Of a stretch of DNA of 64,000 bases, positions 22,901 to 41,215 are shown piece after piece. The notes beneath the pieces were generated by a model. That model did not search any database and was not told the origin of the DNA. It was given only the letters and a program-made list of their open reading frames with translations. This DNA comes from Auanema rhodensis (lineage: Eukaryota; Animalia; Nematoda): positions 6,014,001 through 6,078,000 of the forward strand of contig OZ059898.1 in assembly GCA_964057225.1 (NCBI GenBank), read 5' to 3'. How positions within the stretch are numbered: the first letter of the stretch is position 1; every line of letters begins with the position of its first letter. Made by a program: the position numbers and the translations under genes.

Positions 22901-25900
22901 TTCAATTAATTGTTCACCACATGCAATGAGTTGCTCATCAGATATTACTCTATTTGTTTCTGGTCTTTCAAGCCAAAGACGAAGATAATCCATCCAACGT
23001 GGTTCAACTCTTGCATACTGTATATTAAATTTAATCAATAATAGATATATTATACTTTATAAGTAAACTTACATCAAAATCCATATGAATCAATACGCAT
23101 ACATGTTGGTTTGAATTCAATGTTGATAATATGGCTCGACCAAAAACATCATATAAACCCTATAATATCGATAATTATTTAATTTATGTTTATCAGAAAA
23201 AGTTACATTAATAAATGTTTCAAATGTACGAACATCCGGATAGAATCGTAATAGCTATATCAAAATAAAATGATATGTTAACTTCTACATAAAAACAATT
23301 AAAACCTGAGCACAGTTGGCTGCTGCAGCAAGTGTTACCATCTGACTTCTTCCCTGGCCAGGTTGTCCACTTAAGCATAAATGCTCTCCAGCTTGTCTGA
23401 TGATGCGACTGATTTGTTGTACATATGAGGAAATATCACTATTAAGATGACTCAATTTATTAAAATAATTGTTTTAATTTAATTACCTATCAATAGCTAA
23501 TTGAATTCGATCTCGACGATGATTTCTATGATATTCAAATAAAAAATTTTCCATAATTGTATTGAAATTCATCATGCATTTTACTGGAACATAGCTTAAA
23601 CCATCATAACTTTCAGTTACATCCATTTCAGAATAAAGAAGATTTTCTAACTGAATAGTATTTGATTTAACAGTTTGGTTTGTTTTCTCCAAATATAGAT
23701 CCTAAAGAAATGAAATTACATGCTATATGATTGAACATAAAGACAGACATCATCTTCATCAGACCAAATTGTCAAGTCTTTCAGTAATTCTTCAACTGTT
23801 TTATCAAAATTCTTTTTAAGAGCAAATCTAATATCTTGTAATAATAGTGGAACTTGATCTTCATCTGATATATCATAATAAAGAAATATAAACATGTATT
23901 CAATACCAAGAGCATCCATTATGACACGAAGACATTCATGTACCCAGAGCCGTATAAACGAAGAAGGATCTGGGGAATTGTCAGGAAAGGCAAATTGTAA
24001 ACCTTTGACAATTCTCATGCACACAGATAATACAGAAAAAGCCTGAAATTTTGTTAAATTGCCAAAACAAACTATAGAAATACCCTTTTATAACATTAAA
24101 TTACTGTAACTTATACAGTAAAGTGCACAGTGCTCTGTTTCGAATTACTGTAACTTATACAGTAATGAGCGCAGTGCTCTGATTCGCTATAATATTAATT
24201 AGCCAATCACAGACCGCTGCAGGATACAGTACTCTACATTTGTACATTCGTATCATTTTTTTGATATTTGAATGATTATGTTTCGATTTGAAACGTTTTT
24301 TTTTTCAATTTTTCAATTAAATAATTTAAACTTACAACATATTGCCTTGTAGCTAAAAATACAGTTGCATATGCTATCGGTTCAAGTAGAGATTGATATT
24401 CAGAACTAAATGATCTGAAATATTCATTAGCTTTACCATATATTTGTTACTAATAGTATTACTTCAAATTCAAATTCCAATTAGTAAGTTGATAAACAAG
24501 AAACTGAAGTTCATCAAATGTTAAAGTTTTCATAGGTAAATTAGAAAATGTTTCCCACAAAGCATGATTATCTTCTAAGCTCATCCAATCTTCATCATCG
24601 GTTATCAAAATAAACTAAACAAATTACTTATATATCTTTTATAATTATACATATTACATAAAATATAATATTAATTATGTATTTTATTTTATCAATCAAC
24701 TAACTTTTAATTGTTTATCTGTAACAACTTTTTTTCCATTTTGATAATATGCACCACAGTCAACAAAAAGTTCTAAAACAGCCAAAAGTGACTCAGCAAC
24801 AGAGAATTTATCCACAACAATGTACTAAAAAGAATATTAAAGACCAAAAACTGATGAACATTGAACTTTTGTTTCATTTGTTTTCACATCCTCAACTATT
24901 CTGGCAAACATCTTCTGAATGCTCTCCAAGCAAACTCTTGATTCATTGCCCAGCCATTGAAAAGATATACTGACATTAGGCTCATTCTCAAGTTGCTTTC
25001 CTAGCATCTGTACTAAATATAGTTAGAACTATTATCAAAACATCGAAACTACTTTAACAAAAGTAGATTTTTGACTATATTGTGCCCCACTTATGATTAA
25101 GTTCTTCCCGAGAGACAACAAGCGAATTCCAAAATGAAGCATTCGATCAAGCACTGGCCAAACAACCTAGACTCTTGCATTTGTTGTATAATTTCAGAAG
25201 TTCATACCACAAGATCACTTAATCGATCTTCTTTTTCTAAACTTGAACGATGATATGGTTGTTCATGCCATTTGACAAGCTTTGAAAAATCCTGAAAACA
25301 AAAGCATTATTTTTGAAGAAATCCAGAAGAATACTGTTGTAGACAACTTCCATTCAGAGAGATTTTGAGGAAGTTTCATAATAGTTTTTGTAAAAGCAGT
25401 AGATATTCGCTTGTGCATCTGAGAAATTAATTAAAAATACAAAACAAAACAATATTATACTGAGAGGTCCAATTCTGTTGGTAGATCAGAATACAAGGCA
25501 AGAAAATTATTAATTAAGGTAATACTTGATACAAACACAGCTTCATATCCATTTGGAGATATTTCACAAAATTCCTTAAAATAGGTTATTTCATTTATAG
25601 TATTTATAAAATAAAAGAAAAAATAAACCTGATGAAGAAGTAACATAATAACATCAGCAATAGGTTTACTTAATGATATACTAGTAACAACTTTTTTAAT
25701 CTAAATATTAAAAAATAAATATATCTTATTCAAAAAAATCAAAAACTTACAATAATTTCAAAAACTTCGATAGATTTAGAATTATTAAGTATATTGTGAA
25801 AGCATGTTTTCCAAGATTTTTCATATATTTCGGATATACTATTCATTAAATCTTTGTTAAAAGTTTCATAAGGAATTCCAAGTGTTTGTAAAATCTCTAG

Positions 25901-28900
25901 TTTTGTTTTCTAAAATTGATAAAAATGATTTGTAAGAATATTCAGATTCAATCAGAACTTACATCAGAATCTGGTATACAAAGCACGCAATGTACTGATT
26001 TTGGGCAGGTTTGCATGCTTCCATCAGGTAAAGTCATATATGGTTTTGGAATAACATTACCGTCATACTTAAATATATGTAAATATAAAATTTTGATATA
26101 TAATTAACATACTCTAAGAAATAAACTACTTAGTATAGGGATCATTTGCCAAATATTACTGAATCCATAAAAAATTGTAATTTTATTAACATCTTCTTTA
26201 ATGTCAAAATTATCTAAATATAGTGAAAACTTACAGAAAAAGTTTATAAGAAACTTTACCATTAGAACTAAAAGCTTCGAATTCTTGGAAAATATCTAAC
26301 AATGCTCCTTCATATTGACAACCAAATCCAGAAGAGCTTCTCATTGATTGTTTCTTAGTTAAACTATCGATATAAAACCATTCAATCTGTATTATATATA
26401 AATTATTATTTATAATTTATATGAAAACAAAAACCTTTTGAGGAAGAAAACTTTGACTTCTTCTCAGAAATGATTTAGCTAACGGTCCAACACAAGCAGT
26501 TACAGTTCTTAATTAAGATTATAAGGTTTCAAAAAAGAAATTAACTAAAACCCATTTTTCAGCTGCTCAGCAAGATGTCCTACTGGACATAATGGCTTGA
26601 TGGAAGGAATAGTTGAAACTTCAAGATCAGCATGTTCTTCTTCAATTTCATTCTATAATGTTTTTTATTTATTTCAGATTTAATAATTATTATACATATA
26701 GTGAAATTTCAATTTTTTCTTCTTCAGCTGGTAATATCTCATTTGATATTTGATATGGTGATATACACATAGGCATATGAACTGTTGATATTGATTCTGT
26801 TGATGTAAAAAAAAGTCGAGGAAAAGCAACTAAAAATTAAAAAAAAATAAAACCAAAAATAAATAAATAAAATACCTTTTCCTGCTTTCTTACGAATTGT
26901 AGTGAAGAGGTTATAAAGACCAGAAGAACTTAACTGATTAATATTTTCAAATACAATAAGAATTGATTCTTTAAACGATGTCTATAAAAAAAATATAAAA
27001 TAAATATTTTAAAATATTTTACCTCAACAACTCTATTATATAATTCATCAATTAGATCTTCATGACAATTTACAAAGAAACATGAAACAAATAATTTACT
27101 GATAACTTTATTTAAAATTTTTCTTGTTAATGCAATTGGCCCAATCAAAAGCATAAATTGACCTTCAGACCACAATTGACACATTTTTTTCCTATAATAT
27201 TTACAATTTGAAAAGAAAATATTTATATTCAAATATAATATATAATATTAAAACTTACGGTAAATAAATATGTTCAATATTTAAATATATAAATTCTATT
27301 ATAATTTTTGTATGTTGTTGATGTGATAAGTTTTCCAAAATAAATTCTCCATCCTTTAAAATATTAAAAATATTATAAAAAATAATTAGGAGCGTACCGT
27401 AAACGAAAGATTGATCTCATCTGGAATTTTTTTAATTTTTAACATTTCATTATACAATTGATTTAACATTTTGTTTGATTGTTTACTATACTCACCACGT
27501 TGATCACTAGATAATATCTTAAATAAGAAATATATTTAAATAATATATAAGTTATATTCTATACTTCAGTTATTTTTTCACAAAAAGCTTTTTCAATTTT
27601 CTCTATCAAGTCTGGACATGTCATACGACGACATTGTGCTTTCGTAATCCTTTCTAATATCATACGATCACCATTATGATCATGAAGTTCTAATAATTCA
27701 TCATTATTAAAAAATAATTTCCGTAAATTTGGAAATATAAGATGAATATGATATGAAATTCTATAATTTAAATAAATAAATTGAAATATTTGATCTATCT
27801 AGTAACGTTTCAACTGGTGTTTCAGCAGATAACAAAGCTAAAAGATGATAATCTGATATAAGAGTTAGTCGTGAATAATTGGAACGAATTTTGTTCATCA
27901 CATATGCAAGGTTCTATAATTAAGTTTTAAGTTATTTATATAAATATAGTTATATACCAATGTAATACTAGACATCATATGTGATATGGTTCGTAACCAA
28001 CATTTTATATGTTTCAAATCCAAAATAAGCAAAACACTACTATCAGAAACAAAGCTTTCTACAAGTTTTTTCCAAAATTTCGCACACTGACGAAACTGTA
28101 GAAATTGTTCCTAAATCAAACATTATTGCTTAATAAGAACAACATATCAATATACTTCAAGTTCGTAACGGGAACGCTCAAATAATCGGGCTACAGTATG
28201 CCATTCCTCCCAAGCAACATACCATTTTCCCAGAGTGCTACGCAATTGTTCAACAATTGAAGTCCATTTACTTAATACTATTATGTTTATATATTAAAAC
28301 GTTGAAACATACTTTAAATTTTTGCTTATGTGAGGTGGAGTAGCATTTGTATCTCGAATATCATGAAGAATTTCAACATCACGAATAGCAGCATTCAACT
28401 GATTTCGTAAATTCGTTGGTTGCTTTAATTTCCAGTAATTAGTTTCTTCTAATTCAAACAAAGCCTAAACGATTGAAACATAAGCTAAATCATGATTAAG
28501 TTAACTGTAGTCCAATACGAAATGACATCATCCAGATGATCAATAATTTTTGCTTCTCGTTCAGCAGCAAAGACTATTGGCTTCAATTGACTAAGGTATT
28601 TATCCAATCCCAACTCGCATAATACGGATACAGTTGAATTGGCATATACAGCCATATCAAAAGCTTGAATATAAAAATTATAATGAATATAACTATGATT
28701 GCTAATTGATTGTAATACTCACACATAACTTCAGACATCTTCTTCCAATGATTATCCAAAAGACGAGGGCAACACATGATTTCCATTACAGCAAAATTTT
28801 TTTTGAAAGCATCAATATCATTTCTCATCTGAAATAACCTTTTAAACATATTTATTGAAAAGAAGAATAGTTAAACCTGAACAATAAACAGTCGAGCAGC

Positions 28901-31900
28901 TCGTTGACCAGATAAGCCGCTTTCATATTCAGATAAATCTTTCAGTAACGTAGTTACAAAATCCAATAAAGCAGGAATATTAACTGCTGTTCGATGACTT
29001 TCAAAGAAATCACTGAATATAATAAATTTTAATTTTATAATTTCCATATATTTATAACTTGACTATTTCAAAATAATTCAAAGTACTTTCCAATAACTTT
29101 TCCATCACCAGCATGTTTTCATAAGATTGCCGATGTCTTGGCAAATCAGTCAACACAATTTTGACCACCTACAAATAATTGAAAATTTAATTTTAAGACG
29201 ATGAAAACCTTTTCGAAACGATTCAATTCTTCTAGATCTGCAAGTAAATTTTGAACACTTGGCTTTAACTCTGCTAAATCTTCAAGATATGTTTGAGAAT
29301 CCTGTGGTATTGCCATAGTCTGCAAGACTTTCAGACGTTCATTTAGTTTCTGAGCAGAAACTTGTATGGCTTTTTGTTTTTTCTGAAATAATATTTTTCA
29401 TTAAATTTTGTAACTAAATTTAGTTAACAAACATTTACAAATAACTGAAATGTTCCTAATCGTCGATTAAAGAAGTGTTGATGATGTTCAATCAACTTTG
29501 GTAATGAACGACAAACTGTAGCTAAGCGGATCAGAGCTGATTCTTGTAAAGAGTCTAACTTTACATGCTGAAATAATAAATTTCAACAAAACAATTATTT
29601 AGATTAAACCTGAGTAAAGATTAATAAACGTTCATAAATATCTGATAAGCTTTTCCCATGAGATGGCATATCGGTTTCCAACATTTCATCTACTGTTGCC
29701 TGTGATAATTTTTTAAATTAAAATAAAATAAAACAAAAAAACTTTATTCGCTAACATTTGGGCTGGATTTATGGAACGAAAAGACAGTACTTTAACATCT
29801 TTTCGAAAATCAGATTGTAAAGCATCGATCTGTCTAAATGATTTAATTTTATTAATTCTTCTTTGTTGAAACTAAATATACTTAAAGATTTTTTTTATAA
29901 ATAAATTAATAAATTTATAAGTTTTACTTTATTTTGATTAACAGACACAAACCTGAAAGGTTATGTGCAAACTAATGTGATATACACAACAATTATTTCA
30001 GTCATACCGTTCTAGTCATTCAGCTGGAATGGTTGCTTCAACAACAAAAGCAATGAATCATTTTCTTCTTTTGTTTTTAAAATTTTTTTTTTATTTTTTA
30101 TTTAATTTGATATATATTTGGTTATTTAAATCAGGTAGGGTATATCTATTATCACATCAGTTTTCATTTCTTTTTGTTTTTATTTTATTTTCTTACTCTG
30201 CTAAGTTAATTCGTAATTTGTCTGTCAGAAGATTATATGTAATAAGAAGTCGTTGTTCTATGGCTTGCCATACTTTTCGTAGCTTAATAGTGAAAAGATG
30301 ATGCAAAATTGTCTAAATAAGGTTTTTTTATATTTTTTGATATGATGTGAATGCTCTAGACTTCGGGAGCTCTTGTTAATCGTAGTTTGAGCACTTCAAA
30401 GTTTCTGATAAGGGATAAGAGCTCGTCAGGAGATGAACTATCAGGAATCTAAGCAATTAATAAGAACGATATAGAATATAATAACATTATTTTAACCTTT
30501 TGATCTTGAATAAAAAACTGAAACTGATAGAGAATAGGTATACTTAAGATTTTTTCCTGATTTAGCTGATCCATAATAATTTGACTGACCCTGAAGTATA
30601 GATGTCATAGTAAACTACTAATTGAATATTTTCTTACAAAGTAGTCCAATAATCTACATCAGTTGTTGAAAAACGAACCCATTCGATAGCAGATATTAGA
30701 AGAATTGGTTCCTAAAGATTGTTAGAAAGGTTGCAATTTCTAACTATAGACAACCTTGAAATATTCTTTCAATTGTTCGATTGGAAAGAACAAACGTTTT
30801 CCAACTAAATTACTATCAATTTGTATGATACTATGCTGTAATCATTGTTTTATTATTATAAATTTATATAAATATTAAACCTCTTTTTGTAGAAATCGAA
30901 TATAATTTCTTATTGTATGAAAAGCTAGCTTTGTTGTTTCTTGAATTAATGTAATATCAAACATCTTTTTTCTAGTTTCTTTTTTAGGTAAATCTTGCAA
31001 GAATCTAAAACATATTCTTAACTGATTATCAATCTTTGCTAAATTCTCACTTTTTTTGCAGCTTAGTTTCGAACTCTAAAATTTTAGCTTGAAATACCTT
31101 AGGAACATCTCTGGCTGTTTTTTCTTTCAAATTAATTATATCATTTGGATCAAATAACAAGGACTCTCTAAAGCGTATTGTGTTTTGGTTTTTTTTTCTA
31201 AAATTTGAAAACTTTTGCTCAAAAAATAGTCGTAGTTGCGAGCATTTGAAACTATTACTTTTAGCTATCCTTGTTGTCAATAACTCAGCATTCACTATTC
31301 GCTTTTTGCATTTCGCGAGAATATCTAAAGTATTCAAATAAATGACAAGAAAGTTCATATGAAAAACCGCTTGTCTTCTTTGTTCGTCTTAGCTCTTGTA
31401 TATTATACTGATCGTTCGCAAGATGTATGTATGCTAGACGCTCCGTACAATAAATCCATTCAAGAACTTCTAGTATTACCGATCGCTCTTTTTCAAATAA
31501 TCTATAACTTGTAACCATAAGTGAAAACGATTGAGCTCAATTCATTTCACCTCATTTCTTCGATTCGTTTATTAGCTTGTCGAAAATCTAAGGGAAATTT
31601 AGTCATTATTGCCAGCCATTGTTTCTGAGAGGAAATGTGAAGATATTTTATAAAAACCTGTAATAAATTACCGCTTCGCCAATATCTTTACATTTGACGC
31701 CTTGTTTAAGTGCTTGAATTGATTTCCTCTCATTCCACATATTTATATGATACGTTATGAACGATTTCCTAATTGATAAAGTTGTAAGTTTACAGAAGGC
31801 CTTGAAAAATTTACCTGTACAGGGGTAATCTTTGTCGTTTTCTGTCCTCCTCTTGTTTTTTCCATTCTTCTACCACAGTTTCGATATCCTGTTCTGGTAG

Positions 31901-31954
31901 TGGGTGATAAGCAAGAACTCTACTATATCTTTCTACTGTAACTTGGCATGCCAT
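19972..31954 (-). CDS. dhc-3: Divergent axonemal-type (inner-arm-like) dynein heavy chain, dhc-3-like; many small exons; degenerate AAA sites; ends in the AAA5 buttress region
   Basis: Linker motif IDAFKKNFAVMEIMCCPRLLDNHWKKMSE (28.7-28.85 kb); AAA3-lid RLWVHECLRV (23.9 kb); AAA4 GEHLCLSGQPGQGRSQMVTLAA (23.35 kb); stalk/MTBD NWVQMQKML...KFDVDSL...DFRPVKM...ELSIWINAL (21.4-21.65 kb); last exon EKVLDILEQKTASEILESEEI...FP* with stop at 19972-19974. The start (MACQVTVER, 6 nt after acceptor ttcttttag) is less certain, and the dhc-3 symbol is inferred. Confidence 0.85.
24099..24186. repeat. Two-copy 44-bp tandem repeat with internal palindrome TTACTGTA-ACTTA-TACAGTAA, inside a dynein intron
   Basis: Units start at 24099 and 24143, and each carries the 8-9 bp inverted repeat. 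Confidence 0.85.
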
Positions 31955-32354: not shown

Positions 32355-33409
32355 TTAATGTTCCATCTGAGAAAATCTCTCGGCGGCGTTCTTAAGTTTA
32401 GTTCTCAAAGATGAAGTTTTTACCACGTCTAGAGGGCATTTCTCATCCTTAAAACATCTATTTCAAAAAATATTATATTAACTGAAACAAACCTTATTTT
32501 TAGCTTCAATGTCTGCACCTTTAAAAGCTAACGCCAAAGCAGAATCTTCGCGGTCTTCCTCACATGCCATAAATCTGGAATATAATCAAAAACTTGAATT
32601 AATGCACACTTGAACCAACAAAGGAGTATTTCCTTCGCCATTGTGTGCGTCTATGTTAATATCTCTTTGGGCAATTAGCAGATGAACTATCTAAAGATTT
32701 AAAATGATGTGTCAATTTTTCAATGAATCATACTTGATCATGGCCTTGACTAGCTGCTCTATGAAGAGGTGTATCTCCATACTTGTCAGCGGGATTTACA
32801 TATGCGCCCGAATTAATCAGCAAATAAGCCAACTAAAAATATGAGATTGAGGAAACAAACAGTTTATAGTGAGAACTTCTTTCAAATTCTTACTGCAGGC
32901 ATAATGAAGAGAAGACTGTCCGTTGTTGTTTTTAGTATTCACATCGACCTGAACAATCAGTTCACATAAAATCAATTAACTATTGGAATTAATTACTTCT
33001 GGCAAAGTCAGAAGATACTTCACAAGTTCAGTACGCCCAGCAGAAGTAGCAATCATTAAAGGAGTCCAACCCAACTAGGAAAAAATGATAACAATCCTAA
33101 ATATTAATGTTCTTACTTCATCTTTCAAATTGGCGAAGTCTTGATCAGTACCAATACAGTATCGCAAAATGCTCAGGCATCCCCCAACAGAAGCAAAATG
33201 CACGGTACAGCGTCCAGTCTCGTCTGTAGACTCTAAGAGTTTCGGTATTTTTTGAAGCAATCTTTTTCCATCCTTAAAATATCATGAACATTCCTTTTTT
33301 TCTTTTTATTTATTCTAACATCCTCTTTCCCTTCTCTAAGCAAATTCGAGAGATTTCTAACATGGTCAATCATTTTGAGCTCAGGTTCAGCTTCAGGCTT
33401 GTCCGTCAT
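32355..33409 (-). CDS. PSMD10: Gankyrin / 26S proteasome assembly chaperone PSMD10-like ankyrin-repeat protein
   Basis: Spliced translation with ankyrin repeats GRCTVHFASVGG, LGWTPLMIATSAGRTELVKYLL, NGQSSLHYACSKN, KYGDTPLHRAASQG, GEGNTPL..ACEEDR, which is the characteristic gankyrin series. Confidence 0.88.
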
Positions 33410-33587
33410 TTTCTAAATAAATATAAAAATGTTCTTCACATTTTGGAAAAATATAACTGTAGAAAGAACGTGTATACTAGTCAATAAAATATACAGAAAA
33501 ACGTTTAAAATTTATACAAATCTTCAGAATAACATATCTTCCCATATATATATAAATTAAAAGCCCATAAAACATTGCTTCCTATTT

Positions 33588-34526
33588 TTAAAAAATAGAA
33601 AATTTAGACAGAACCCGCTTTTGAAGTATATAATATACAACAAGAGCATAAAAAATACAAGCTATGGTGACTAGGATCTTATCTGTTAGTTCTCTCCGCT
33701 CATATTTTGATAATAATTTATTAGATGTCTGAAAAAAATCGAGAAATCAACTAATATTATAGCATATTTACCTGTATATGAGTGGCTTGACTCTCGAATT
33801 CAGTTTGAGTCTCTGCAAGAATTGCACTGGAATGTACTAAACTATCCATAGTCTGTTCACTATGAGTGACTCTTTCATTTACTTTGGCAACAAGATCCGT
33901 TAATCTATCAGTAGTCTAAAAAAATAATTGTAATTACTGGTAGCAACTAATTTTCTCACCTTGGTCGCATTTTGCTTCAAGGTATTGTGATCAACCAAAC
34001 GTTTTCTTATCTCAACACTCTGAGCACCCCCCGAGAGTAACATCGAACGGGTTTTCTCAACTGAATTTTTTGGGTAAAATATATTACAATATGACTATAA
34101 ACCTATATTTTTCTTCACTATAATTAAAGAATTTGTTAATCCAACTGTATTTTCTTCAAGTTCTTTTTTATGTTTTTCAAGTTGAGCTTGCATCTCCTTT
34201 TGTTCATTTGCCAAAGGGACCTTAATGCATTGTGTATAGACAAAAAGCCCCTATCAAATAAGTTTACCTGATTGACAACATTCTGCAAACTTTCTACTTT
34301 CTTTCTCAATTGACTGATGAGGTCTTTAAGCTGTTTATTTTCCTCAAACAGAGATTTTTCATCAGAAAATGAACTGCAATGCAATAGCATTTGTTATTCT
34401 ACTTATGAAAACTTTGATTTACCTTAAGTTTAGAATTCTTTTTTTCAACTCAGAATCTAAACGTACAATATCGCGATTTAAAACTATAGCTTCTACAGAG
34501 TTGGGGTCATTGTTTTTAGTAATCAT
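33588..34526 (-). CDS. sec-20: Sec20/BNIP1 ER Qb-SNARE
   Basis: C-terminus SNKLLSKYERRELTDKILVTIACIFYALVVYYILQKR matches the BNIP1 KYxRRELTDK plus TM signature, with a SNARE-like coil before it. An alternative start at the ATG at 34578 (micro-exon) is possible. Confidence 0.9.
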
Positions 34527-34743
34527 TCGCTATAAATTATTATTAAAAACTGTGCTATAATTCTGAACGCGGTACCATTTCGGTTAAAACCATCAAAAAG
34601 AAAAGGCTTCTCAGCATTTTTAATGCTTCATTTGAAAAGTAATAACAACAACAACTAAATATCAAACAATTAAAGAAATATGATGTCCTAACAATGACTA
34701 AAACTATTATTTAAAGCGTGCAAACTAAATTAAACTAAACAGC

Positions 34744-34981
34744 TTAGACGTTGAATCCAGCTTCTCTCATGCATTGTTTGTGGGCTTCAATAAGTTTTCC
34801 GCAATTTTCTTCCCCATTTTCAATTATACAAGCATCCCGAATCTATCAATAAAAAGTTTAAACAGTAAGACTACATATAATATACTTGTTTTGTTTCAGG
34901 GCAAGCACAACAGGGCCTCAGCTTCTTGGTAGAATCAGCAGAGTTATTGCTACTATTAGCGTTACCTTTTTCTTCAGGCAT
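34744..34981 (-). CDS. cox-17: Cytochrome c oxidase copper chaperone COX17 (2 exons, 64 aa)
   Basis: [46 protein letters not shown]: CC copper site and twin CX9C motifs. Confidence 0.97.
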
Positions 34982-35027
34982 TTCTGAAACATTTTTTAAT
35001 TCCAAAAAGGTTCAGAATTTAAAAATC

Positions 35028-35050
35028 AAAGTAAAGAACTGTTTTAACAG
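35028..35050 (-). promoter_or_regulatory. Candidate Ur element (short stem-loop plus UAYYUU) upstream of the cox-17 trans-splice acceptor
   Basis: Minus strand reads CTGTTAAAACAG (self-complementary), then TTCTT, then TACTTT about 45 nt upstream of gtttcag|aaATG. Confidence 0.4.
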
Positions 35051-35474
35051 AATGTACACAATTTTGAATCTGGAAAAAACGCTTTATATCTTTTCTAAAA
35101 ACTACAACAGCGGACTGTGAACGTTGAGTTATCATGTTATATATTCAAAATATTTAAGACAGAATATAATATTGTAAAAACACAGTGAAAGGGTTAGGGG
35201 AGTGGAATTTATATAAAATAGTTATGATGACTATCTAATCAAAATGAGCAACACAGCAAGCGTTTACGGTTAATGGAATAACTCTGATTGGAGATAAGCT
35301 TAGAGAAAAAGTCAAGCGATAAAAATAACTTTGACAAAGCAAACCATTTAGAGAAAATCAGGAAAATCATATTATCATAGACCATCATCATCATCATTAT
35401 CATATACCGGCAATAAATATATTCAGCACCTGAAGTCATTATTTGAATTAGTAAAGTACTTCAAAATAGGCGTT

Positions 35475-35478
<4 letters not shown>

Positions 35479-35508
<30 letters not shown>
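35479..35508. repeat. (TA)n microsatellite in the ubc-20 3' region
   Basis: Direct reading. Confidence 0.85.
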
Positions 35509-35511
<3 letters not shown>

Positions 35512-35526
35512 ATATATATCGCTTAA

Positions 35527-36361
35527 TCACGAAAAGATATAATCGGTGGCTTTCGAGAGATCCCAGTTACTACAGCTCAAAACCGAAATGGCTTCATCCT
35601 GAAAGTTAAAGTTGAAAGTACAAGCTGTTTTTGAATGTTCTACTAACCTCTGCAACACCCATGTCCATTAGTCTAGTAATTTTTTGTTTAAATTCAGGAC
35701 TATCGGGTACAGTTCCTTTAGCAAAACGTGATGTCCAAAAAATAGCAGTTTCCTAAAAAAACCATATTAAGTGGAACGCTTCTCAAAGATCAAACCTTAA
35801 ACAATTGTGGGTTATCCATATATTGCCGAGCAACAACAGCATCTTGTGGATCTTTCGGTTCTGGAGTACACATTAAAGATTGAATAGAAAGTAAGACTGT
35901 TCTTAAAGTCAATGATGCAGCCCTGAATAAGAAATACACTATGAGTAAACTATTGATTAGTTATTGATAACCATTGGTCCTTCAAAATATCTAGGCAAAT
36001 TATCCCTGTTTGGGAGCTAATGTTTGGATGCCAGATCTTGGTGATAAATTTGGCCTTAAATACGAATATATCGATAATAGCCTCAAATAGAACTAAAATA
36101 CCTTTGGTGGAATAAATGGATATTGCTCGGGAATTACAATAGAAATATCAAAAGTACCACCCTCATACGGCGAATCAGGAGGACCTTTAATTGTTCCCTG
36201 CAAAAAAAAACAAATGTTAAAGAAGGATAATTAATTCAAACTTTTATATCAGTTAAAGTATCGTTTAAAATTTCAATCATGATTCCAGTATCCTGGATTT
36301 CTTTGTTTGTTACAACTTCTTTGCATTCCCTTTGAATTCGAACAAAAGCAATATTAGACAT
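35527..36361 (-). CDS. ubc-20: Ubiquitin-conjugating enzyme E2 K (UBE2K/E2-25K) with C-terminal UBA
   Basis: [22 protein letters not shown]...[10 protein letters not shown]...[37 protein letters not shown]...[11 protein letters not shown]...LVDMGV...ATDYIFS*; near-identical to remembered C. elegans UBC-20. Confidence 0.97.
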
Positions 36362-36651
36362 TTCCTGAAGTGATTTGATTAATAATTTAAAAAAAAAAGT
36401 AAAAAAGAGTAAAACGTGTTACTTAAAACTTTATTCACGCGGTGAAAAACAATAAACCTATATAAAAGTCATAGAAAATATAAAAGGAGGATGCGCGTTT
36501 GTATTAGAACGCGTCGTGAGGTAAAAAATATATATAAATATGAACCACGACCAACGCCGAAGTGCACTGAGAAAAAATGAACTTTGACCTTGTATGATTT
36601 ACTATTACTTGTGTATTATGTTATATCTTTTATCATTTTGTTTTTTTTTAG
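36362..36651. promoter_or_regulatory. ~290-bp bidirectional promoter between ubc-20 (-) and mxl-2 (+)
   Basis: Head-to-head starts, each with a splice acceptor next to the ATG; three CGCG cores (tcacgcgg, atgcgcgt, aacgcgtc) stand out in an AT-rich background. Confidence 0.6.
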
Positions 36652-37374
36652 ATGAACAGAAGACGTTTAACCATTGAAGAAACTAACACAATGAGCCCAT
36701 CAGAATCTGATTCATTTGTTGATAAAAAAAAAGAAACGCATTTACGATGTGAACGTCAGCGTCGAGAAGCAATAAATGTAAGTCTATAACACTAGTTTCT
36801 CGATAAGTTGTTTAAATTAGAATGGATATAATGATTTGAAAGATTTAATACCACAAACTCCTTCGGCTATGGGCTGCAAAATAACAAATGCAGCTATATT
36901 ATTCAGGTGTTTTTGTATGGAAAGACAAGGGTTTATCTCATTTTTAGAGCATGTGAGCATATGACACAATTAAATAATGAAGTTGAGAGTGGAAATAAAG
37001 AAATTCAACAGCTAACTACTCAAGTATCGGCTCTTGAAATGATCGCTGCTCAATACGAAACTATGACTGCCGAATCGACGACAGGAGGATCTGTATCTAT
37101 CCAAGCAAAAATGGTAAAATCGTTATTTGTTCCAACAACAATTTTTTTTTAAAGATACAAGCCCTTCTTGATGAATGTTTTTCAACTTTCTCGGAACAAG
37201 TAGATTTCACAAGTTATGCAACAATCACAAGAACCTTATTGACTTGGGTGGAATCATTGGCAGGGGATAATGAGCAATTCAAGGTAAAGACTTTCATATT
37301 TATACATTAAGGTTTTTTTTTAGAAAACAGCGAGTAGATTATTGACAATAGCTTTAAGTCAGACATCTAGTTAG
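36652..37374 (+). CDS. mxl-2: Max-like bHLH-ZIP transcription factor (MLX orthologue), 5 exons
   Basis: KKKETHLRCERQRREAINNGYNDLKDLIP...KITNAAILFRACEHM...LTTQVSALEMIAAQYE...LLDECFSTF...TLLTWVE: bHLH, zipper and MLX-type C-terminal domain. Confidence 0.93.
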
Positions 37375-37931
37375 TTTTTTTCTTAATCTAATTTTCGGGT
37401 TCCCGCAATATGTTTTCTCAAATTTTTGTTACTTGTGGATTGTTATATATTTGATCCAAGTTGTTTAACTCAGATAAAAAGCCTTTTTTGTTAGCTTGAA
37501 TAATAGGATTATATTCTTTTGTACAAAGAAAACTAGAATTTTTATTTAGAAAGTATTGAATCAATAGCTCAATAATTATAAAAAACATATCGTTTAGTGG
37601 GGATTTTTTAGCAATAACCTATTCTCATAGAAGAAGTTAACCCCAGCATTAGATTTTATATTTCTGCTTATACCAAGTTTATCCCATTTAATTTTATACT
37701 CGGAACGATTTTCTATTCCAAAACTGAACGACGCCAAATTTCTCTTGCTCAATATACTAAATGTGATTATAACCCAAATATGTGTAATGTTAATATATTT
37801 ATTCCAAAGGTTATGATATTTTATGTAATAATAATATTCTTGCCACTATATATGTTACTGTTTCAAATGTTCTATCATTTTATTGAAAAACATAATAAAT
37901 ATTTATTTTTTTTATTTTTTCCTTTCTTAAC

Positions 37932-39135
37932 TTATTTTCTTCTTTTGATTTCTTGATTAATTTTTCTCTGTAAAGCGTATTCTACATTCTTCAATTGTTC
38001 TATCCCTGGTATCCAGTGTAATGCATTCCAATATTGCTCCCAAATATCTTCAGTATCCCATCGCTGAACTAATCCTCCAACATGAATAATAATGGGGACC
38101 TATGCTTCAAAAGTAAGTTTGAGATATAAGCATTAGACGTACATATTTAGGAATTGGGTGAGCATCAACATCTATCTCTATATTGTAACTGACGATTAAT
38201 GGACGAGATAATACTTCTCTTATCGACTTTGCAGTCTTTAATTCATCTTCGTATACTATTGGAACTTGTCTAAATTCATAAAACTAAGTATTAATATTGT
38301 TCAAATATGTTTTTACCTTATATAATCTAAAACATTCTTTTCCTCTTCATTATCGAGAAGCTTATATGGTCCTTTCAGACAAATTTTATTTTGACGTTTT
38401 TCGTTCATCTAAATTTTCATTAATCGTTAAAGTTATTTGATCAGGCAAAATAAATAAATTTTAATACCAAAGGATCAATTTTTGTGTTAGTATTTCCAAG
38501 CTTACAATATGTTGACCATAAAGTCGTTTCCCAGACACATGTATCACCACTCAAGGCGCTTCCAATAGTAATAGGACATAAGGTAGCTGAAGCAATGCTT
38601 GAGAAAAGGTTTTTATGTAGAACCAACTTAAGTTTTCTTTGTATTTTTCTAATTCCTTAACCATTTTGGGACTAGACACAGAAACAACATATCGGGGTCC
38701 CCAATAAAACGAAGAAAGAGGTCCATAGCATAAACTACAATATTCTAGAAACTGGCGAAAATTTGGATATCTAAATTTGATATTTATATATACATATAGA
38801 TGACGTTCCCAATTATATGTCTAACCGTGCTATTTCCTCTAGATGTCCTTTTATGTCAGCGATATTGTTCAAAGACTGGCCTGGCTCAATGGTTAATGGA
38901 GGCAGATTTTCAGCTTCCATATCCAGCTTCATTCCAGGAATAGTTGTGTAATCATAAGGACGAGGCTACAAGTTGAAATGATTCATTCATCTCAATAAAC
39001 TTCGAGCATGCAACTACTTACAAATAGCCGCTTCCATATATAATCTGGACGAACCTTTGGAAATTTATTGTATAAATATAGAAAAAAAAGAAATCCTAAT
39101 CCATTTAGAAAGAAGTAAAGTAAAACATCATACAT
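37932..39135 (-). CDS. Membrane-anchored, internally deleted cytochrome P450 (CYP20-like) remnant of ~300 aa, without a heme-Cys motif
   Basis: Seven exons splice in frame: MYDVLLYFFLNGLGFLFFLYLY (signal anchor)...TTIPG...GHLEEIARYPNFRQFLEYCSLCYGPLSSFYWGPRYVVSVSS...IREVLSR...NIEIDVDAHPIPKYVPIIIHVG...IKRRK*. It resembles the remembered CYP20A1 N-terminus and beta1/beta2 strands. Confidence 0.7.
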
Positions 39136-39724
39136 ATTGTTGAAATTCAAAACCACAAAGCTAAAACTGCTATGATAAGGTGACCTTTCAATTCATTGAT
39201 AAGAATATACATAGATTATGATTTCATAATTCTATTTGGAAACATCTTACTACAATATCATACTATTTCTTTATAAATTAAAATAAACTAAAAACTATAA
39301 TAAAGTCGACATGGTGAAAAATTCGATGAAATTTTGTTTGCTCTTCGAATACCGGATTCTGAAATTTCACTGGCCTATACTGGTCGCGAACCGACGGTCT
39401 TCTATACTACAGAACGAGAACTAATGCCAACCAATACTTTATCAAAATTCAAAAGGATCGAGATAATTTTAAAATTGTTACCTCTTGGGAAATATATTTT
39501 AAAGAATTAATAACATATATGTATTTTAGATTACACGTTTACTTCAATATCTTCAAAAAATAAACATGAACTTAAAAACATAATAAACTTATATAATATT
39601 TGAAGAAAAAACATAATATAATGAAATTAAAAATATAATAAGAATGAACTGATTAAAGTATTCATGCTGGATAAAGAGATCAAATGTTGTTGGCTTTTAT
39701 TCAACACAAAGCTTCGAATCAGAA

Positions 39725-41215
39725 CTAGAATGAAGTCAAAAATCCTTTTGGTTTAACTTTAATGTCATTGCTGGACATTCTTTTCAATGGAGCTTGTTGA
39801 GTAGAGGCTGTACCGGTAGAAGTTGGAACAGTAACCTGAGTATCTGTAACTGAGCCTACTGATCCAGATCTTGGTTTTTCAAAAGATCTAAAATAATTTA
39901 AAATTAATAATACATACATTTTGAAAAATAAACTTACTTGCTGAATGATCTGTTCATAGTGAATTCATAACGAGGAGATCTAGCAGGCCCTAGTGTAATC
40001 TGAAATAATAATTAAATTAGCTTTGATACCCATATACATTAATATATTTTTTTCTTTCTTACTATCTTATCGTTAAGTATTTTATTTTCTGATTTTATCT
40101 AGAGTTCGTTGCTTAGTTTGATATTCTATGAACTGTGAAAGAGAAGTGTTTATAAAAAGTGAAAATCATGTGATGCGAAAAATAAGTTTTAAGATATTAT
40201 ATTATCATATTATAATTTTATCTTGAATGAAAATGGGTGTTGGCTTATTCATATTCACACTTTTTGAGCTACTGTTCTCAAAAAGGTTGGAGAATAGATA
40301 AGCATAATCATATTCTTGATGATTCATATATATAAATATATCTGGAAATGTGATGGAAAGACAGAAAAAGCTATAAAACAAGCTGTATATCTATGAACGG
40401 AAGTCTTTTGTCCTGTACTGTTCTATGTTTTATTCGATAAGAGATGGCGCCGAAACAGTAAAATTAATATGATCAATGTCTTACTCAAAATTTTCGTAGA
40501 TTCTTTGCATACAAGTGAAAGAGGATTATTGAACAATTTAAAGATTAAATTATATTTTTAATCTTTTGGGGCTGGTATCGTTTCGCCCACCCCCCCCCTA
40601 AGAGTTAACATTAGAGCGCATGCGTTTTTTACCTGAAAATAAAGAGTCTCATCTCTGTGAGTGGGAGTGCTCTCTCTGATACTTTTAATACTTTTAAATT
40701 TTGTTGAAGCTCTCTCTATCTGGGGGGGATACCCCCCCAGACCCCCCGGATTTGGGATAGAGCACTCCCGCTGGTTTATGCAAAGCTAGTGCGTGCCCAA
40801 AATGTTATCTTAGATCATGCGTTATTTACTCGAAAATACAGTCTCATTTCTGCGAGTTTAATACTTTTAAATTTTGTTGAAGCTTTCTCTATCTGGGGGG
40901 GATACCCCCCCAGACCCCCCGGATCTGGGATAGAGCACTCCCGCTAGTTTATGCAAAGCTGGTGTGTGCCCAAAATGTTATAAGCGCGCTCTAATGTTAA
41001 CTCTCTGATTATTAGGGGGGGGGGGTGGGCGAAACAATACCAGCGCCAATCTTTTTTATCATAAAGTCATATGTTATGATTAAAATTCTTGTGAGCATTT
41101 TCTGAGTTTTAAGATGGAAAATTAAATGTTTTACCTTCTTCATTTTCTTCAGCTGCTCCTTCTTGTCAACTTCAGTTGAGCGCGTAGTAGTCATGTTTCC
41201 TTGTCCAACAGACAT
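39725..41215 (-). CDS. Small (101 aa) Ser/Thr-rich protein of unknown function, 3 exons
   Basis: Exons 41215-41135, 39999-39938 and 39887-39725 have canonical GT-AG sites and splice in frame: MSVGQGNMTTTRSTEVDKKEQLKKMKKITLGPARSPRYEFTMNRSFSKSFEKPRSGSVGS...KRMSSNDIKVKPKGFLTSF*. Confidence 0.75.
40568..41047. mobile_element. Non-autonomous DNA transposon (MITE), Merlin-like, 480 bp
   Basis: TIRs GGGGCTGGTATCGTTTCGCCCACCCC...AGAGTTAACATTAGAGCGC and its reverse complement (with a short indel). Perfect 8-bp TSD AATCTTTT at 40560-40567 and 41048-41055. Two internal direct repeats (~40635-40808 and ~40832-40981). Confidence 0.85.

What the first reader, a model, noticed from the sequence alone, without database searches (positions are those of the whole stretch)
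37932..39135. Intact but heme-less, half-length CYP20-like P450 pseudo-enzyme
Seen: a 7-exon, stop-free ~300-aa gene with canonical splice sites that the ORF track catches only as one fragment. It keeps the P450 N-terminal module (signal anchor ending LYLY, IPG hinge, 'F.QFL....YGP..SFYWGPRYVVS') and a beta-strand segment (EIDVDAHPIPKYVPIII). It has only a distorted K-helix (EVLSR rather than ExxR), no I-helix consensus, no PERF and no FxxGxxxCxG heme loop. Established: P450s are ~500 aa and need the heme Cys; CYP20A1 is an orphan with N-terminus MLDFAIF...LYLYP...IPG...LHEFLVNLHERYGPVVSFWFGRRLVVS, and nematodes are usually described as lacking full CYP20. Inference: the membrane anchor and beta-domain were kept under selection for a non-catalytic role (scaffold, lipid binding or reductase modulation), which would also hint at what orphan CYP20 does.
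Basis: partly seen in the sequence, partly recalled or inferred. Interest (0 to 1): 0.75.

Follow-up and report, generated by a model that had tools for sequence, protein, structure and literature searches.

The report
Heme-less half-size CYP20 relic gene
This nematode gene is an intact, strongly conserved, half-length descendant of the orphan enzyme cytochrome P450 20A1. It has lost everything needed to hold heme, so it must do something other than P450 chemistry, and its C. elegans counterpart (F40G9.5) has no described function.

Summary
On the minus strand at 39135-37932 there is a 7-exon, 300-codon gene with GT-AG introns of 41-59 nt. It is single-copy in its 181-Mb genome.

It is the orthologue of Auanema sp. 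JU1783 CAI4227507.1 (69% identity, same exon plan, same neighbours) and of C. elegans F40G9.5. The family is 230-307 aa long and was found in clade IV and V nematodes. It is under strong purifying selection (dN/dS 0.09 in one Caenorhabditis pair).

An AlphaFold model of the Auanema orthologue is confident (pLDDT 86). In two independent structure searches its top matches were all cytochrome P450s (Z about 11, about 220 residues aligned).

Profile searches tie the family to CYP20A1 specifically:
- 45-57 bits against CYP20A1 sequences, versus 13.7 bits for the best solved P450.
- hhalign E 6e-17 for the N-terminal module, plus a colinear J/K-helix and beta-sheet match.
- One shared phase-0 intron position.

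Helices C to I, the meander, the Cys loop and any conserved cysteine are gone.

The proposed roles are untested, and reductase modulation looks unlikely. I found no paper describing this. The spliced window protein was never joined; searches were run exon by exon.

The parts
39022..39135 (-). Exon 1 (38 codons): start codon, N-terminal transmembrane signal anchor, basic stop-transfer residues
   Evidence: 74% identical to Auanema P0001 residues 1-38. AF2 gives a helix at 2-24 with pLDDT 94 in the orthologue. Aligns with the CYP20 anchor in hhalign.
38826..38965 (-). Exon 2: hinge with the invariant P.P.DYTTIPG.K motif and an acidic loop up to the G-H-L-x-E-I motif
   Evidence: 71% identical to Auanema. 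Invariant columns in family alignment A1. TTIPG and GN(H)L..I are shared with the CYP20A1 profile.
38628..38770 (-). Exon 3: P450 A helix, strands beta1-1 and beta1-2, B helix (the YGP...SFYWGPRYVV block)
   Evidence: Pfam p450 E 2.2e-4, profile positions 21-60. 91% identical to Auanema. It is the only N-terminal match to the CYP20 profile in the whole genome.
38468..38586 (-). Exon 4: remnant of the B-C region (P.TIGS.LSGD...W), then a short variable linker that replaces helices C to I
   Evidence: tblastn to P0001 residues 133-157. BLASTP extends the CYP20 alignment into this block. The 41-nt intron 3 fits the Auanema protein.
38317..38408 (-). Exon 5: linker plus J-helix equivalent with the family-invariant Gln (QNK)
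   Evidence: Q179 is invariant in A1. It aligns with the CYP20 J helix 'Q.K' in the second hhalign hit.
38143..38269 (-). Exon 6: K-helix equivalent (ExxR degraded to KSIR), beta1-4 and the beta2 hairpin with DAHPIPKY
   Evidence: 74% identical to Auanema. hhalign A1 169-260 matches CYP20 307-391. The exon ends at a phase-0 intron shared with CYP20A1 genes.
37932..38099 (-). Exon 7: beta1-3, short helices, the W-(I/L)-P-G motif, a C-terminal amphipathic helix and the TAA stop. No Cys, no PERF, no heme loop
   Evidence: 56% identical to Auanema residues 249-303. No Cys. The model helix 281-302 falls within the structural alignment, which runs to about P450 residue 458, roughly where the L helix lies.
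37880..37931 (-). 3' UTR start with three AATAAA signals (37916, 37907, 37884)
   Evidence: Pattern search. No conserved coding block between here and the convergent HLH gene.

Best explanation
The gene encodes the single-copy orthologue of C. elegans F40G9.5. This is an ER-type, N-terminally membrane-anchored protein of about 300 aa that descends from the orphan cytochrome P450 CYP20A1.

It keeps the CYP20 anchor and hinge, the A helix, the beta-1 sheet, the B helix, the J and K helices and the beta-2 hairpin. It has lost helices C to I, the meander, the Cys-pocket loop and any conserved cysteine. It therefore cannot be a heme-thiolate mono-oxygenase.

Shown here: the gene structure, orthology, synteny, purifying selection, a confident P450-like half fold, the specific CYP20 affinity, and the absence of the heme-binding parts.

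Inferred: it works as a non-catalytic, membrane-proximal binding module. The parts under the tightest constraint are the transmembrane helix (invariant Tyr, Asn, Gly, Phe), the TTIPG hinge and the beta-sheet face. In real P450s that face sits on the membrane at the mouth of the substrate channel. So the protein most likely binds a hydrophobic ligand or a partner membrane protein there, rather than oxidising anything.
For: Gene model and intact frame.

Orthologues of 230-307 aa in Auanema, Mesorhabditis, Caenorhabditis (10 species or contigs), Pristionchus, Bursaphelenchus, Aphelenchoides, Acrobeloides, Panagrellus and Panagrolaimus.

Synteny: the gene is followed by a convergent HLH gene, then UQ_con, then COX17 and Sec20. 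This order holds in the window, Auanema, C. remanei and C. elegans.

Selection: window versus Auanema pN 0.195 against a saturated pS of 0.80. For a Caenorhabditis cDNA against C. remanei, dN/dS is 0.09.

Transcript evidence: a spliced mRNA contig carries the complete 271-aa ORF and its stop.

Fold: AF2 pLDDT 86, pTM 0.81. All 43 Foldseek hits with E <= 0.001 that were listed are P450s. VIA-align gives Z 11.6 with 216-229 residues aligned. In the Foldseek-independent search the top 50 are all P450s, Z 11.0 to 6.4.

CYP20 affinity:
- The family profile, searched against 5.8 billion proteins, recovered as its only non-family hits two 466-aa CYP20A1-like P450s at E 4e-9 and 7e-9.
- hhalign against a 15-species CYP20A1 alignment: E 6.3e-17 (prob 98.8) for the N-terminal 93 columns, and a colinear second hit at E 5.7e-5.
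- The family HMM scored 45-57 bits against the CYP20A1 sequences listed (first 60 output rows of a 118-sequence search), versus 13.7 bits for the best of all solved P450s.
- The CYP20 HMM gives 22-50 bits on family members (12-13 bits on the two divergent panagrolaimid proteins), where generic Pfam p450 gives 0-19.
- In the own genome the family profile hits only this gene. The CYP20 profile's only N-terminal hit is this gene's exon 3.
- A phase-0 intron after IPK(N/Y) is shared with Mercenaria and Priapulus CYP20A1.

No Cys column is conserved in the family.
Against: Pfam p450 stays below its gathering score on every member.

The second (C-terminal) hhalign hit is only moderately supported (prob 66%).

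Identity to CYP20A1 is about 25%, below any nomenclature threshold.

There is no RNA evidence for this particular species.

Whole-protein analyses used the Auanema orthologue as a stand-in, because the window's exons were not joined.

Nothing tested here bears on the proposed binding role. A non-canonical cofactor site cannot be excluded from sequence alone.

I had no sequences of other P450 clans for a formal tree.
Confidence: 0.8

Rival explanations
1. The short protein is an annotation or model artefact. On this reading the real gene is a full-length P450 whose C-terminal exons (heme loop) lie further downstream or were missed.
For: P450s are normally about 460-500 aa. Gene models in many nematode assemblies are automatic. 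One older Pristionchus model (P0014, 397 aa) is longer.
Against: The stop falls at the same place in more than 15 species.

A spliced mRNA contig ends the ORF at 271 aa.

AATAAA signals follow the stop within 50 nt.

The convergent HLH gene's conserved coding blocks end about 560 nt downstream, and no conserved coding block lies between.

The CYP20 profile finds no C-terminal exon anywhere near the window. Its heme-region hits all lie in other, canonical P450 genes.

The missing helices C to I are internal, so extra 3' exons could not supply them.
Confidence: 0.03
2. It is a decaying pseudogene remnant of a P450 that happens still to be open in this genome.
For: The catalytic motifs are lost and about a third to two fifths of the ancestral length (roughly 160-200 residues) is gone. 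Pfam is below threshold.
Against: All 7 exons are open with intact splice sites.

The gene is 69% identical to the Auanema orthologue while silent sites are saturated, and dN/dS is 0.09 in Caenorhabditis.

There are 31 invariant columns across clade IV and V nematodes.

The predicted fold is confident and compact.
Confidence: 0.02
3. It is P450-derived, but from another clan (2, 3, 4 or mitochondrial, the clans nematodes are known to keep). The likeness to CYP20 would then be generic N-terminal P450 similarity.
For: The structural best matches are CYP2, CYP1 and CYP3 enzymes, because no CYP20 structure is solved. Exon 3 alone scores about the same with generic Pfam p450 (20.6 bits) as with the CYP20 profile in the genome scan (21.8 bits).
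Against: The same family HMM gives 45-57 bits on CYP20A1s but at most 13.7 bits on any solved P450 of clans 2, 3, 4, mitochondrial, 7, 19, 46 or 51.

It hits none of the 20 or so canonical P450 loci in its own genome.

The shared TTIPG hinge, the GN/H-L..I motif and the SFW(W/Y/F)G.RYVV block are features of the CYP20 alignment.
Confidence: 0.07
4. It still binds heme or another cofactor through a non-cysteine ligand (for example the invariant His of DAHPIP) and keeps some redox or sensor activity.
For: One His is invariant. CYP20A1 itself has an atypical heme loop and no I-helix motif (PMC8110760, PMC4964396).
Against: The invariant His aligns with the GGH.IPK His of CYP20 on the beta-2 hairpin. 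That site is far from the heme-ligand position in the P450 fold (P450 topology from general knowledge).

The I helix and the Cys loop, which lie against the two faces of the heme, are absent, and the L helix at most survives as a short relic.
Confidence: 0.06

Closest known systems
Cytochrome P450 20A1 (CYP20A1), the last orphan human P450; comparators used here were invertebrate orthologues such as Mercenaria, Priapulus, Strigamia, Branchiostoma
   Same: - Single-copy gene with a conserved N-terminal anchor.
- TTIPG hinge, GN(H)L..I motif, and (S)L.EFL followed by GP(I/L)(A/S)SFW.G.RYVV.
- J helix Q.K, and the beta-hairpin H.IPK followed by (T/I)P(V/I)I.
- A phase-0 intron inside that hairpin motif.
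- An I-helix oxygen-activation motif is already missing in CYP20A1 itself (PMC8110760).
   Different: CYP20A1 is 460-480 aa. It has helices C to I, ExxR, FDPDRF and a PFGFAGKR.CPG Cys loop.

The nematode protein is 230-307 aa. It has none of these and no conserved Cys.

Identity is only about 25%.
C. elegans F40G9.5 and its unnamed orthologues (for example Auanema sp. JU1783 CAI4227507.1)
   Same: Same architecture end to end, same neighbours, same exon plan in Auanema, and 39-69% identity.
   Different: The window protein, like those of Auanema, Mesorhabditis and Pristionchus, carries an extra basic C-terminal helix of about 30 aa that Caenorhabditis lacks.

These proteins are listed as uncharacterised. 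The only two papers found that mention F40G9.5 give no function.
Canonical microsomal P450s (CYP2B6, CYP2C9, CYP1A1, CYP3A4 structures)
   Same: The best structural matches. About 220 of 260 soluble-domain residues superpose, Z 11-11.6, rmsd 4.2-4.6 A.
   Different: Only about half of the P450 fold is present. Sequence identity is 10-15%. There is no heme site.

Membership tests
Cytochrome P450 superfamily (Pfam PF00067) | Score at or above the Pfam gathering cut-off (22.8 bits) | tested here: not met
   Exon 3 scores 20.6 bits. Auanema P0001 scores 19.1. Other members score 0-13.8.
Cytochrome P450 superfamily (Pfam PF00067) | P450 fold | tested here: inconclusive
   About half of the fold is present. 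All listed top hits in three searches are P450s, Z up to 11.6 with about 220 residues aligned. The C-I helical core is missing.
Cytochrome P450 superfamily (Pfam PF00067) | Heme-thiolate cysteine in the FxxGxRxCxG loop | tested here: not met
   No conserved Cys column in the family. No Cys in window exons 6-7. The profile alignment ends before the loop.
Cytochrome P450 superfamily (Pfam PF00067) | K-helix ExxR and meander PERF/FDPDRF (ERR triad) | tested here: not met
   The aligned position reads KSIR in the window and Auanema, and xxxR or other residues elsewhere. No PERF-like motif is present.
Cytochrome P450 superfamily (Pfam PF00067) | I helix with (A/G)Gx(D/E)T(T/S) | tested here: not met
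   The model has no long internal helix. CYP20 residues of about 93-296 have no counterpart. The motif is already degenerate in CYP20A1 (PMC8110760).
CYP20 family (P450 nomenclature: more than 40% identity to members) | More than 40% amino-acid identity over the protein | tested here: not met
   25-26% identity over 66-69% of the query.
CYP20 lineage (descent, not nomenclature) | Closest P450 relatives are CYP20A1s, reciprocally, and the CYP20 N-terminal signature is shared | tested here: met
   against the control. Own-genome reciprocal scans. No formal tree with other clans was possible.
F40G9.5 orthologue group of nematodes | End-to-end colinear similarity, single copy, conserved neighbours (HLH, UQ_con, COX17, Sec20) | tested here: met

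The most novel reading that the evidence does not exclude
The conserved job of the orphan CYP20A1 across animals may be, at least in part, heme-independent and carried by its unusually conserved anchor, hinge and beta-sheet module. Nematodes would then have kept exactly that module and discarded the catalytic half. If so, C. elegans F40G9.5 mutants and interactors could reveal what CYP20A1 does in vertebrates.
Probability: 0.2. Interest if true: 0.85.

Novelty: new variant of a known kind. Interest (0 to 1): 0.62.

Why it matters
CYP20A1 is called the last human orphan P450 (PMC8669017), and its function has resisted substrate screens.

Here a whole animal group has kept, under strong purifying selection, only the membrane anchor, hinge and beta-domain of that protein. 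The helical core, the Cys loop and the thiolate cysteine that make up most of the heme pocket were deleted.

This is a natural deletion experiment. It shows that this part of a P450 can be a stable, useful protein on its own, and it gives a genetically tractable handle (C. elegans F40G9.5).

It also corrects the picture that nematodes simply 'lost' CYP20.

Finally, it is a clear animal example of a P450-derived pseudo-enzyme. I found none described in the searchable literature.

Tried and rejected
- Pfam on the seven exon pieces: only exon 3 gave a sub-threshold p450 hit.
- Family profile against PDB sequences: nothing significant. The best P450 was at E 0.35, which served as a negative control.
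- ESM Atlas look-up of F40G9.5: scores of 0.79 or less, uninformative.
- Bacterial promoter/terminator scan of the 3' region: irrelevant for a eukaryote.
- Literature searches for F40G9.5, CYP20 in nematodes and P450 pseudoenzymes: no description of this family.
- A candidate 'heme-like' ORF downstream (37594-37752, FSFG...) is not conserved with Auanema and is not hit by the CYP20 profile. Rejected.
- My first exon-4 boundaries (GTAAGC donor) broke the frame with exon 5. They were replaced by the GTATTA donor at 38467, which fits the Auanema protein.
- Window versus Auanema dS is saturated, so no finite dN/dS could be given for that pair.
- No human sequence was used.

Full report
**What is there.**

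The window is AT-rich eukaryotic DNA (29% GC). It comes from contig C6 of a 181-Mb, 112-contig genome.

On the minus strand between 39135 and 37932 I reconstructed a gene of seven exons:
- e1 39135-39022
- e2 38965-38826
- e3 38770-38628
- e4 38586-38468
- e5 38408-38317
- e6 38269-38143
- e7 38099-37932

The six introns are 41-59 nt long and all are GT..AG. The exons sum to 903 nt, which is 300 codons plus TAA. Three AATAAA signals lie within 50 nt after the stop.

Every search on the window gene was run exon by exon, by reference. Whole-protein work used the closest natural orthologue as a stand-in. No human sequence was met or used; the CYP20A1 comparators are invertebrate proteins returned by the tools.

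**Is it more than chance?**

Exon 3 alone matches Pfam p450 at E 2.2e-4 (20.6 bits, profile positions 21-60). That is just below the 22.8-bit cut-off.

A phmmer search with exon 3 against 1.84 billion representative proteins found 13 hits. The top hit is a 303-aa protein of Auanema sp. JU1783 (91% identity over the exon). tblastn shows the window gene is colinear with that protein from Met1 to the last residue. The tblastn hits fall in the same seven exon-sized blocks.

**The family.**

Word-based searches with the Auanema protein, and then with a 14-sequence alignment (A1), recovered orthologues of 230-307 aa. They come from Mesorhabditis, ten Caenorhabditis species or contigs (including C. 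elegans F40G9.5, 271 aa), Pristionchus, Bursaphelenchus, Aphelenchoides, Acrobeloides, Panagrellus and Panagrolaimus. Those are clade IV and V nematodes.

All carry source names such as 'unnamed' or 'uncharacterized'. One UniRef entry is auto-named 'Cytochrome P450', and a few names are evidently wrong.

A1 has 31 invariant columns. They are concentrated in the transmembrane helix (Y, N, G, F, F), the hinge (P.P.DYTTI.G.K, with the Pro of IPG nearly invariant), the G...F.W..RY.V block and the E....AHP.P...P block.

In the window's own genome the A1 profile hits only this locus, so the gene is single-copy.

**Orthology by context.**

The gene is followed by a convergent HLH gene, then a UQ_con gene on the same strand as the finding's gene, then COX17 and Sec20. 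This order is found in C. elegans chromosome III, C. remanei and Auanema and in the window.

A tblastx comparison of window 33000-40000 with the Auanema locus shows uninterrupted colinearity of all these genes. There is no conserved coding block between the stop at 37932 and the HLH gene's last conserved coding block at about 37368.

**Selection and expression.**

- Exon-by-exon codon alignments of the window gene with Auanema give 69% amino-acid identity over 281 codons. pN is 0.195, against a saturated pS of 0.80.
- A Caenorhabditis pair at suitable distance (Logan contig L012 versus C. remanei genomic L013) gives dN 0.059, dS 0.64 and dN/dS 0.09.
- L012 carries the 271-codon ORF without the introns present in L013. 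It is therefore a spliced mRNA that ends at the short ORF's stop.

The protein is made under strong purifying selection and is not a pseudogene. There is no RNA evidence for the window's own species.

**Fold.**

AlphaFold2 on the Auanema orthologue with alignment A1 gave pLDDT 86.1 and pTM 0.81. The elements, in order:
- an N-terminal helix (2-24)
- a helix (89-100)
- two strands (103-108, 111-116)
- a helix (119-126)
- short elements
- helices 176-185 and 208-218
- four short strands (230-253)
- short helices
- a terminal helix (281-302)

Foldseek against the PDB gave 43 hits at E <= 0.001, and all those listed are P450s. VIA-align on those chains gave Z up to 11.6, with 216-229 residues aligned at 4.2-4.6 A. 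The alignment spans model residues 44-303 and P450 residues of about 28-458. The Foldseek-independent scan of 48,161 chains gave P450s at all top 50 ranks (Z 11.0 to 6.4). The soluble part is therefore roughly half of a P450 fold.

**Which P450?**

The A1 profile, searched against 5.8 billion proteins with the E-value ceiling at 10, returned beyond the family itself only two proteins. Both are 466 aa and both are CYP20A1-like (a bivalve and a Logan contig), at E 4e-9 and 7e-9.

From one of them I collected more than 100 CYP20A1 orthologues. I aligned 15 from molluscs, echinoderms, hemichordates, amphioxus, a brachiopod, a nemertean, an annelid, a coral, a centipede and a priapulid (A2).

hhalign of A1 against A2 gave two colinear hits:
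- E 6.3e-17, probability 98.8%. It covers the anchor, the TTIPG hinge, the GN(H)L..I motif and the block L.EFL...GP(I/L)(A/S)SFW.G.RYVV (A1 4-120 with A2 7-99).
- E 5.7e-5, probability 66%. It covers A1 169-260 with A2 307-391.

Controls with the same family HMM:
- 45-57 bits on the CYP20A1 sequences listed (first 60 output rows of a 118-sequence search), versus 13.7 bits for the best of all solved P450s.
- No hit on any of the canonical P450 loci in the same genome.

In the other direction:
- The CYP20 HMM gives 22-50 bits on family members (12-13 bits on the two divergent panagrolaimid proteins), where generic Pfam p450 gives 0-19.
- In the genome scan, the CYP20 profile's only N-terminal match is exon 3 of this gene.
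- No full-length CYP20 exists in the genome. The other hits are the generic I-helix and heme-loop regions of canonical P450 genes, at 41 bits or less.

One more piece of support comes from intron positions. The phase-0 intron that separates window exons 6 and 7 (after IPKY, before VPII) is present in Auanema, C. elegans and C. remanei. It sits at exactly the aligned position of a phase-0 intron in the full-length CYP20A1 genes of Mercenaria and Priapulus (after IPKN, before TPVI). I could not test whether that intron is specific to CYP20.

**What was kept and what was lost.**

I mapped the hhalign ranges onto an AF2 model of the bivalve CYP20A1 (pLDDT 83).

Kept:
- the anchor
- A' and A helices
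- beta1-1, beta1-2 and the B helix
- the start of the B-C region (BLASTP extends the alignment to about residue 120)
- the J helix
- the K helix
- beta1-4, beta2-1, beta2-2 and beta1-3

Lost:
- Roughly 175-200 residues holding helices C to I. About 25-50 residues replace them.
- The last 85 or so residues: the FDPDRF meander, the PFGFAGKR.CPG loop with Cys414, the L helix and the C-terminal sheets.

In Caenorhabditis, about 15 residues with a W-L-P-G-F motif replace that tail. In the window, Auanema, Mesorhabditis and Pristionchus there are about 33 residues ending in a basic helix. The structural alignment runs through that helix to about P450 residue 458, so it may be an L-helix relic.

No cysteine column is conserved. 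Window exons 6 and 7 contain no cysteine at all. Canonical heme-thiolate chemistry is therefore excluded.

**How it most likely works.**

Shown: it is an N-terminally anchored, compact, conserved protein without a P450 heme site.

Inferred: it is a non-catalytic module that acts at the membrane surface. I give three reasons.
- Constraint is highest in the transmembrane helix. This includes an invariant Asn and Gly, which is unusual for P450 anchors and suggestive of helix-helix contacts. It is also high in the hinge and in the beta-sheet face.
- In P450s that face lies on the bilayer and forms the mouth of the substrate channel (general knowledge of P450 structure).

I put about 0.4 on 'binds a hydrophobic ligand or a membrane partner'. 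Scaffold versus lipid binding is unresolved.

**Comparison and novelty.**

By nomenclature the protein is not a CYP20. Identity is about 25%, Pfam is below its cut-off, and four defining P450 motifs are absent. By descent it is a CYP20 derivative.

The literature held here treats CYP20 as lost or sparse in protostome and ecdysozoan lineages (PMC2678163, PMC8110760, PMC8669017). It contains no description of F40G9.5 beyond list entries and one mistaken urease comparison. A search for P450 pseudoenzymes found nothing comparable.

Databases may already tag some members with a P450 superfamily label, since one UniRef name says so. The recognition is therefore not wholly without precedent.

I class it as a new variant of a known kind. 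It is interesting mainly because it offers a genetic route into the function of the last orphan human P450.

Noticed in passing
window 33000-40000 (versus L011, L013, L014): A block of seven genes keeps its order and orientation between this genome and Auanema: Ank-repeat, Sec20, COX17-like, UBC with UBA tail, bHLH, the CYP20 relic, and a small upstream gene. The core part is also kept in Caenorhabditis. The neighbours are far more conserved (UBC exons 95-100%) than the CYP20 relic (69%).
   Followed up: partly
window e6|e7 junction 38143/38099; L015 28962; L016 3924/4174: A phase-0 intron between IPK(N/Y) and (T/I/V)P(V/I)I is at the same aligned position in the nematode genes and in full-length CYP20A1 genes of a bivalve and a priapulid. 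Whether other P450 clans share it was not tested.
   Followed up: partly
L012 (Logan SRR33369745 contig): The contig holds the spliced 271-aa ORF and runs on into the convergent HLH gene on the other strand. The two mRNAs' 3' ends apparently overlap or abut closely enough to be assembled together.
   Followed up: no
P0002, P0030, P0014 (database entries): Source names or lengths look wrong for family members. A Heterorhabditis fragment is called 'Inorganic diphosphatase'. A Panagrellus protein is called 'Autophagy-related protein'. An older 397-aa Pristionchus model has an unrelated tail. These are probably fused or mislabelled gene models.
   Followed up: no
P0069 (Batillaria attramentaria, 654 aa): This protein carries two copies of the CYP20 N-terminal module (family HMM hits at 72-125 and 392-458). 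It is probably two tandem CYP20A1 genes fused by annotation. Several molluscs list multiple CYP20A1-like genes, unlike the single copy in vertebrates.
   Followed up: no
window 19972-31954: Another first-stage note on this window describes a truncated axonemal-type dynein. I did not examine it.
   Followed up: no
G000 C1:8.68-8.69 Mb, C1:7.86-7.87 Mb, C4:15.97-16.05 Mb: The Pfam p450 scan of the genome found clusters of tandem canonical P450 genes, so the genome has a normal nematode CYP complement alongside the relic.
   Followed up: no
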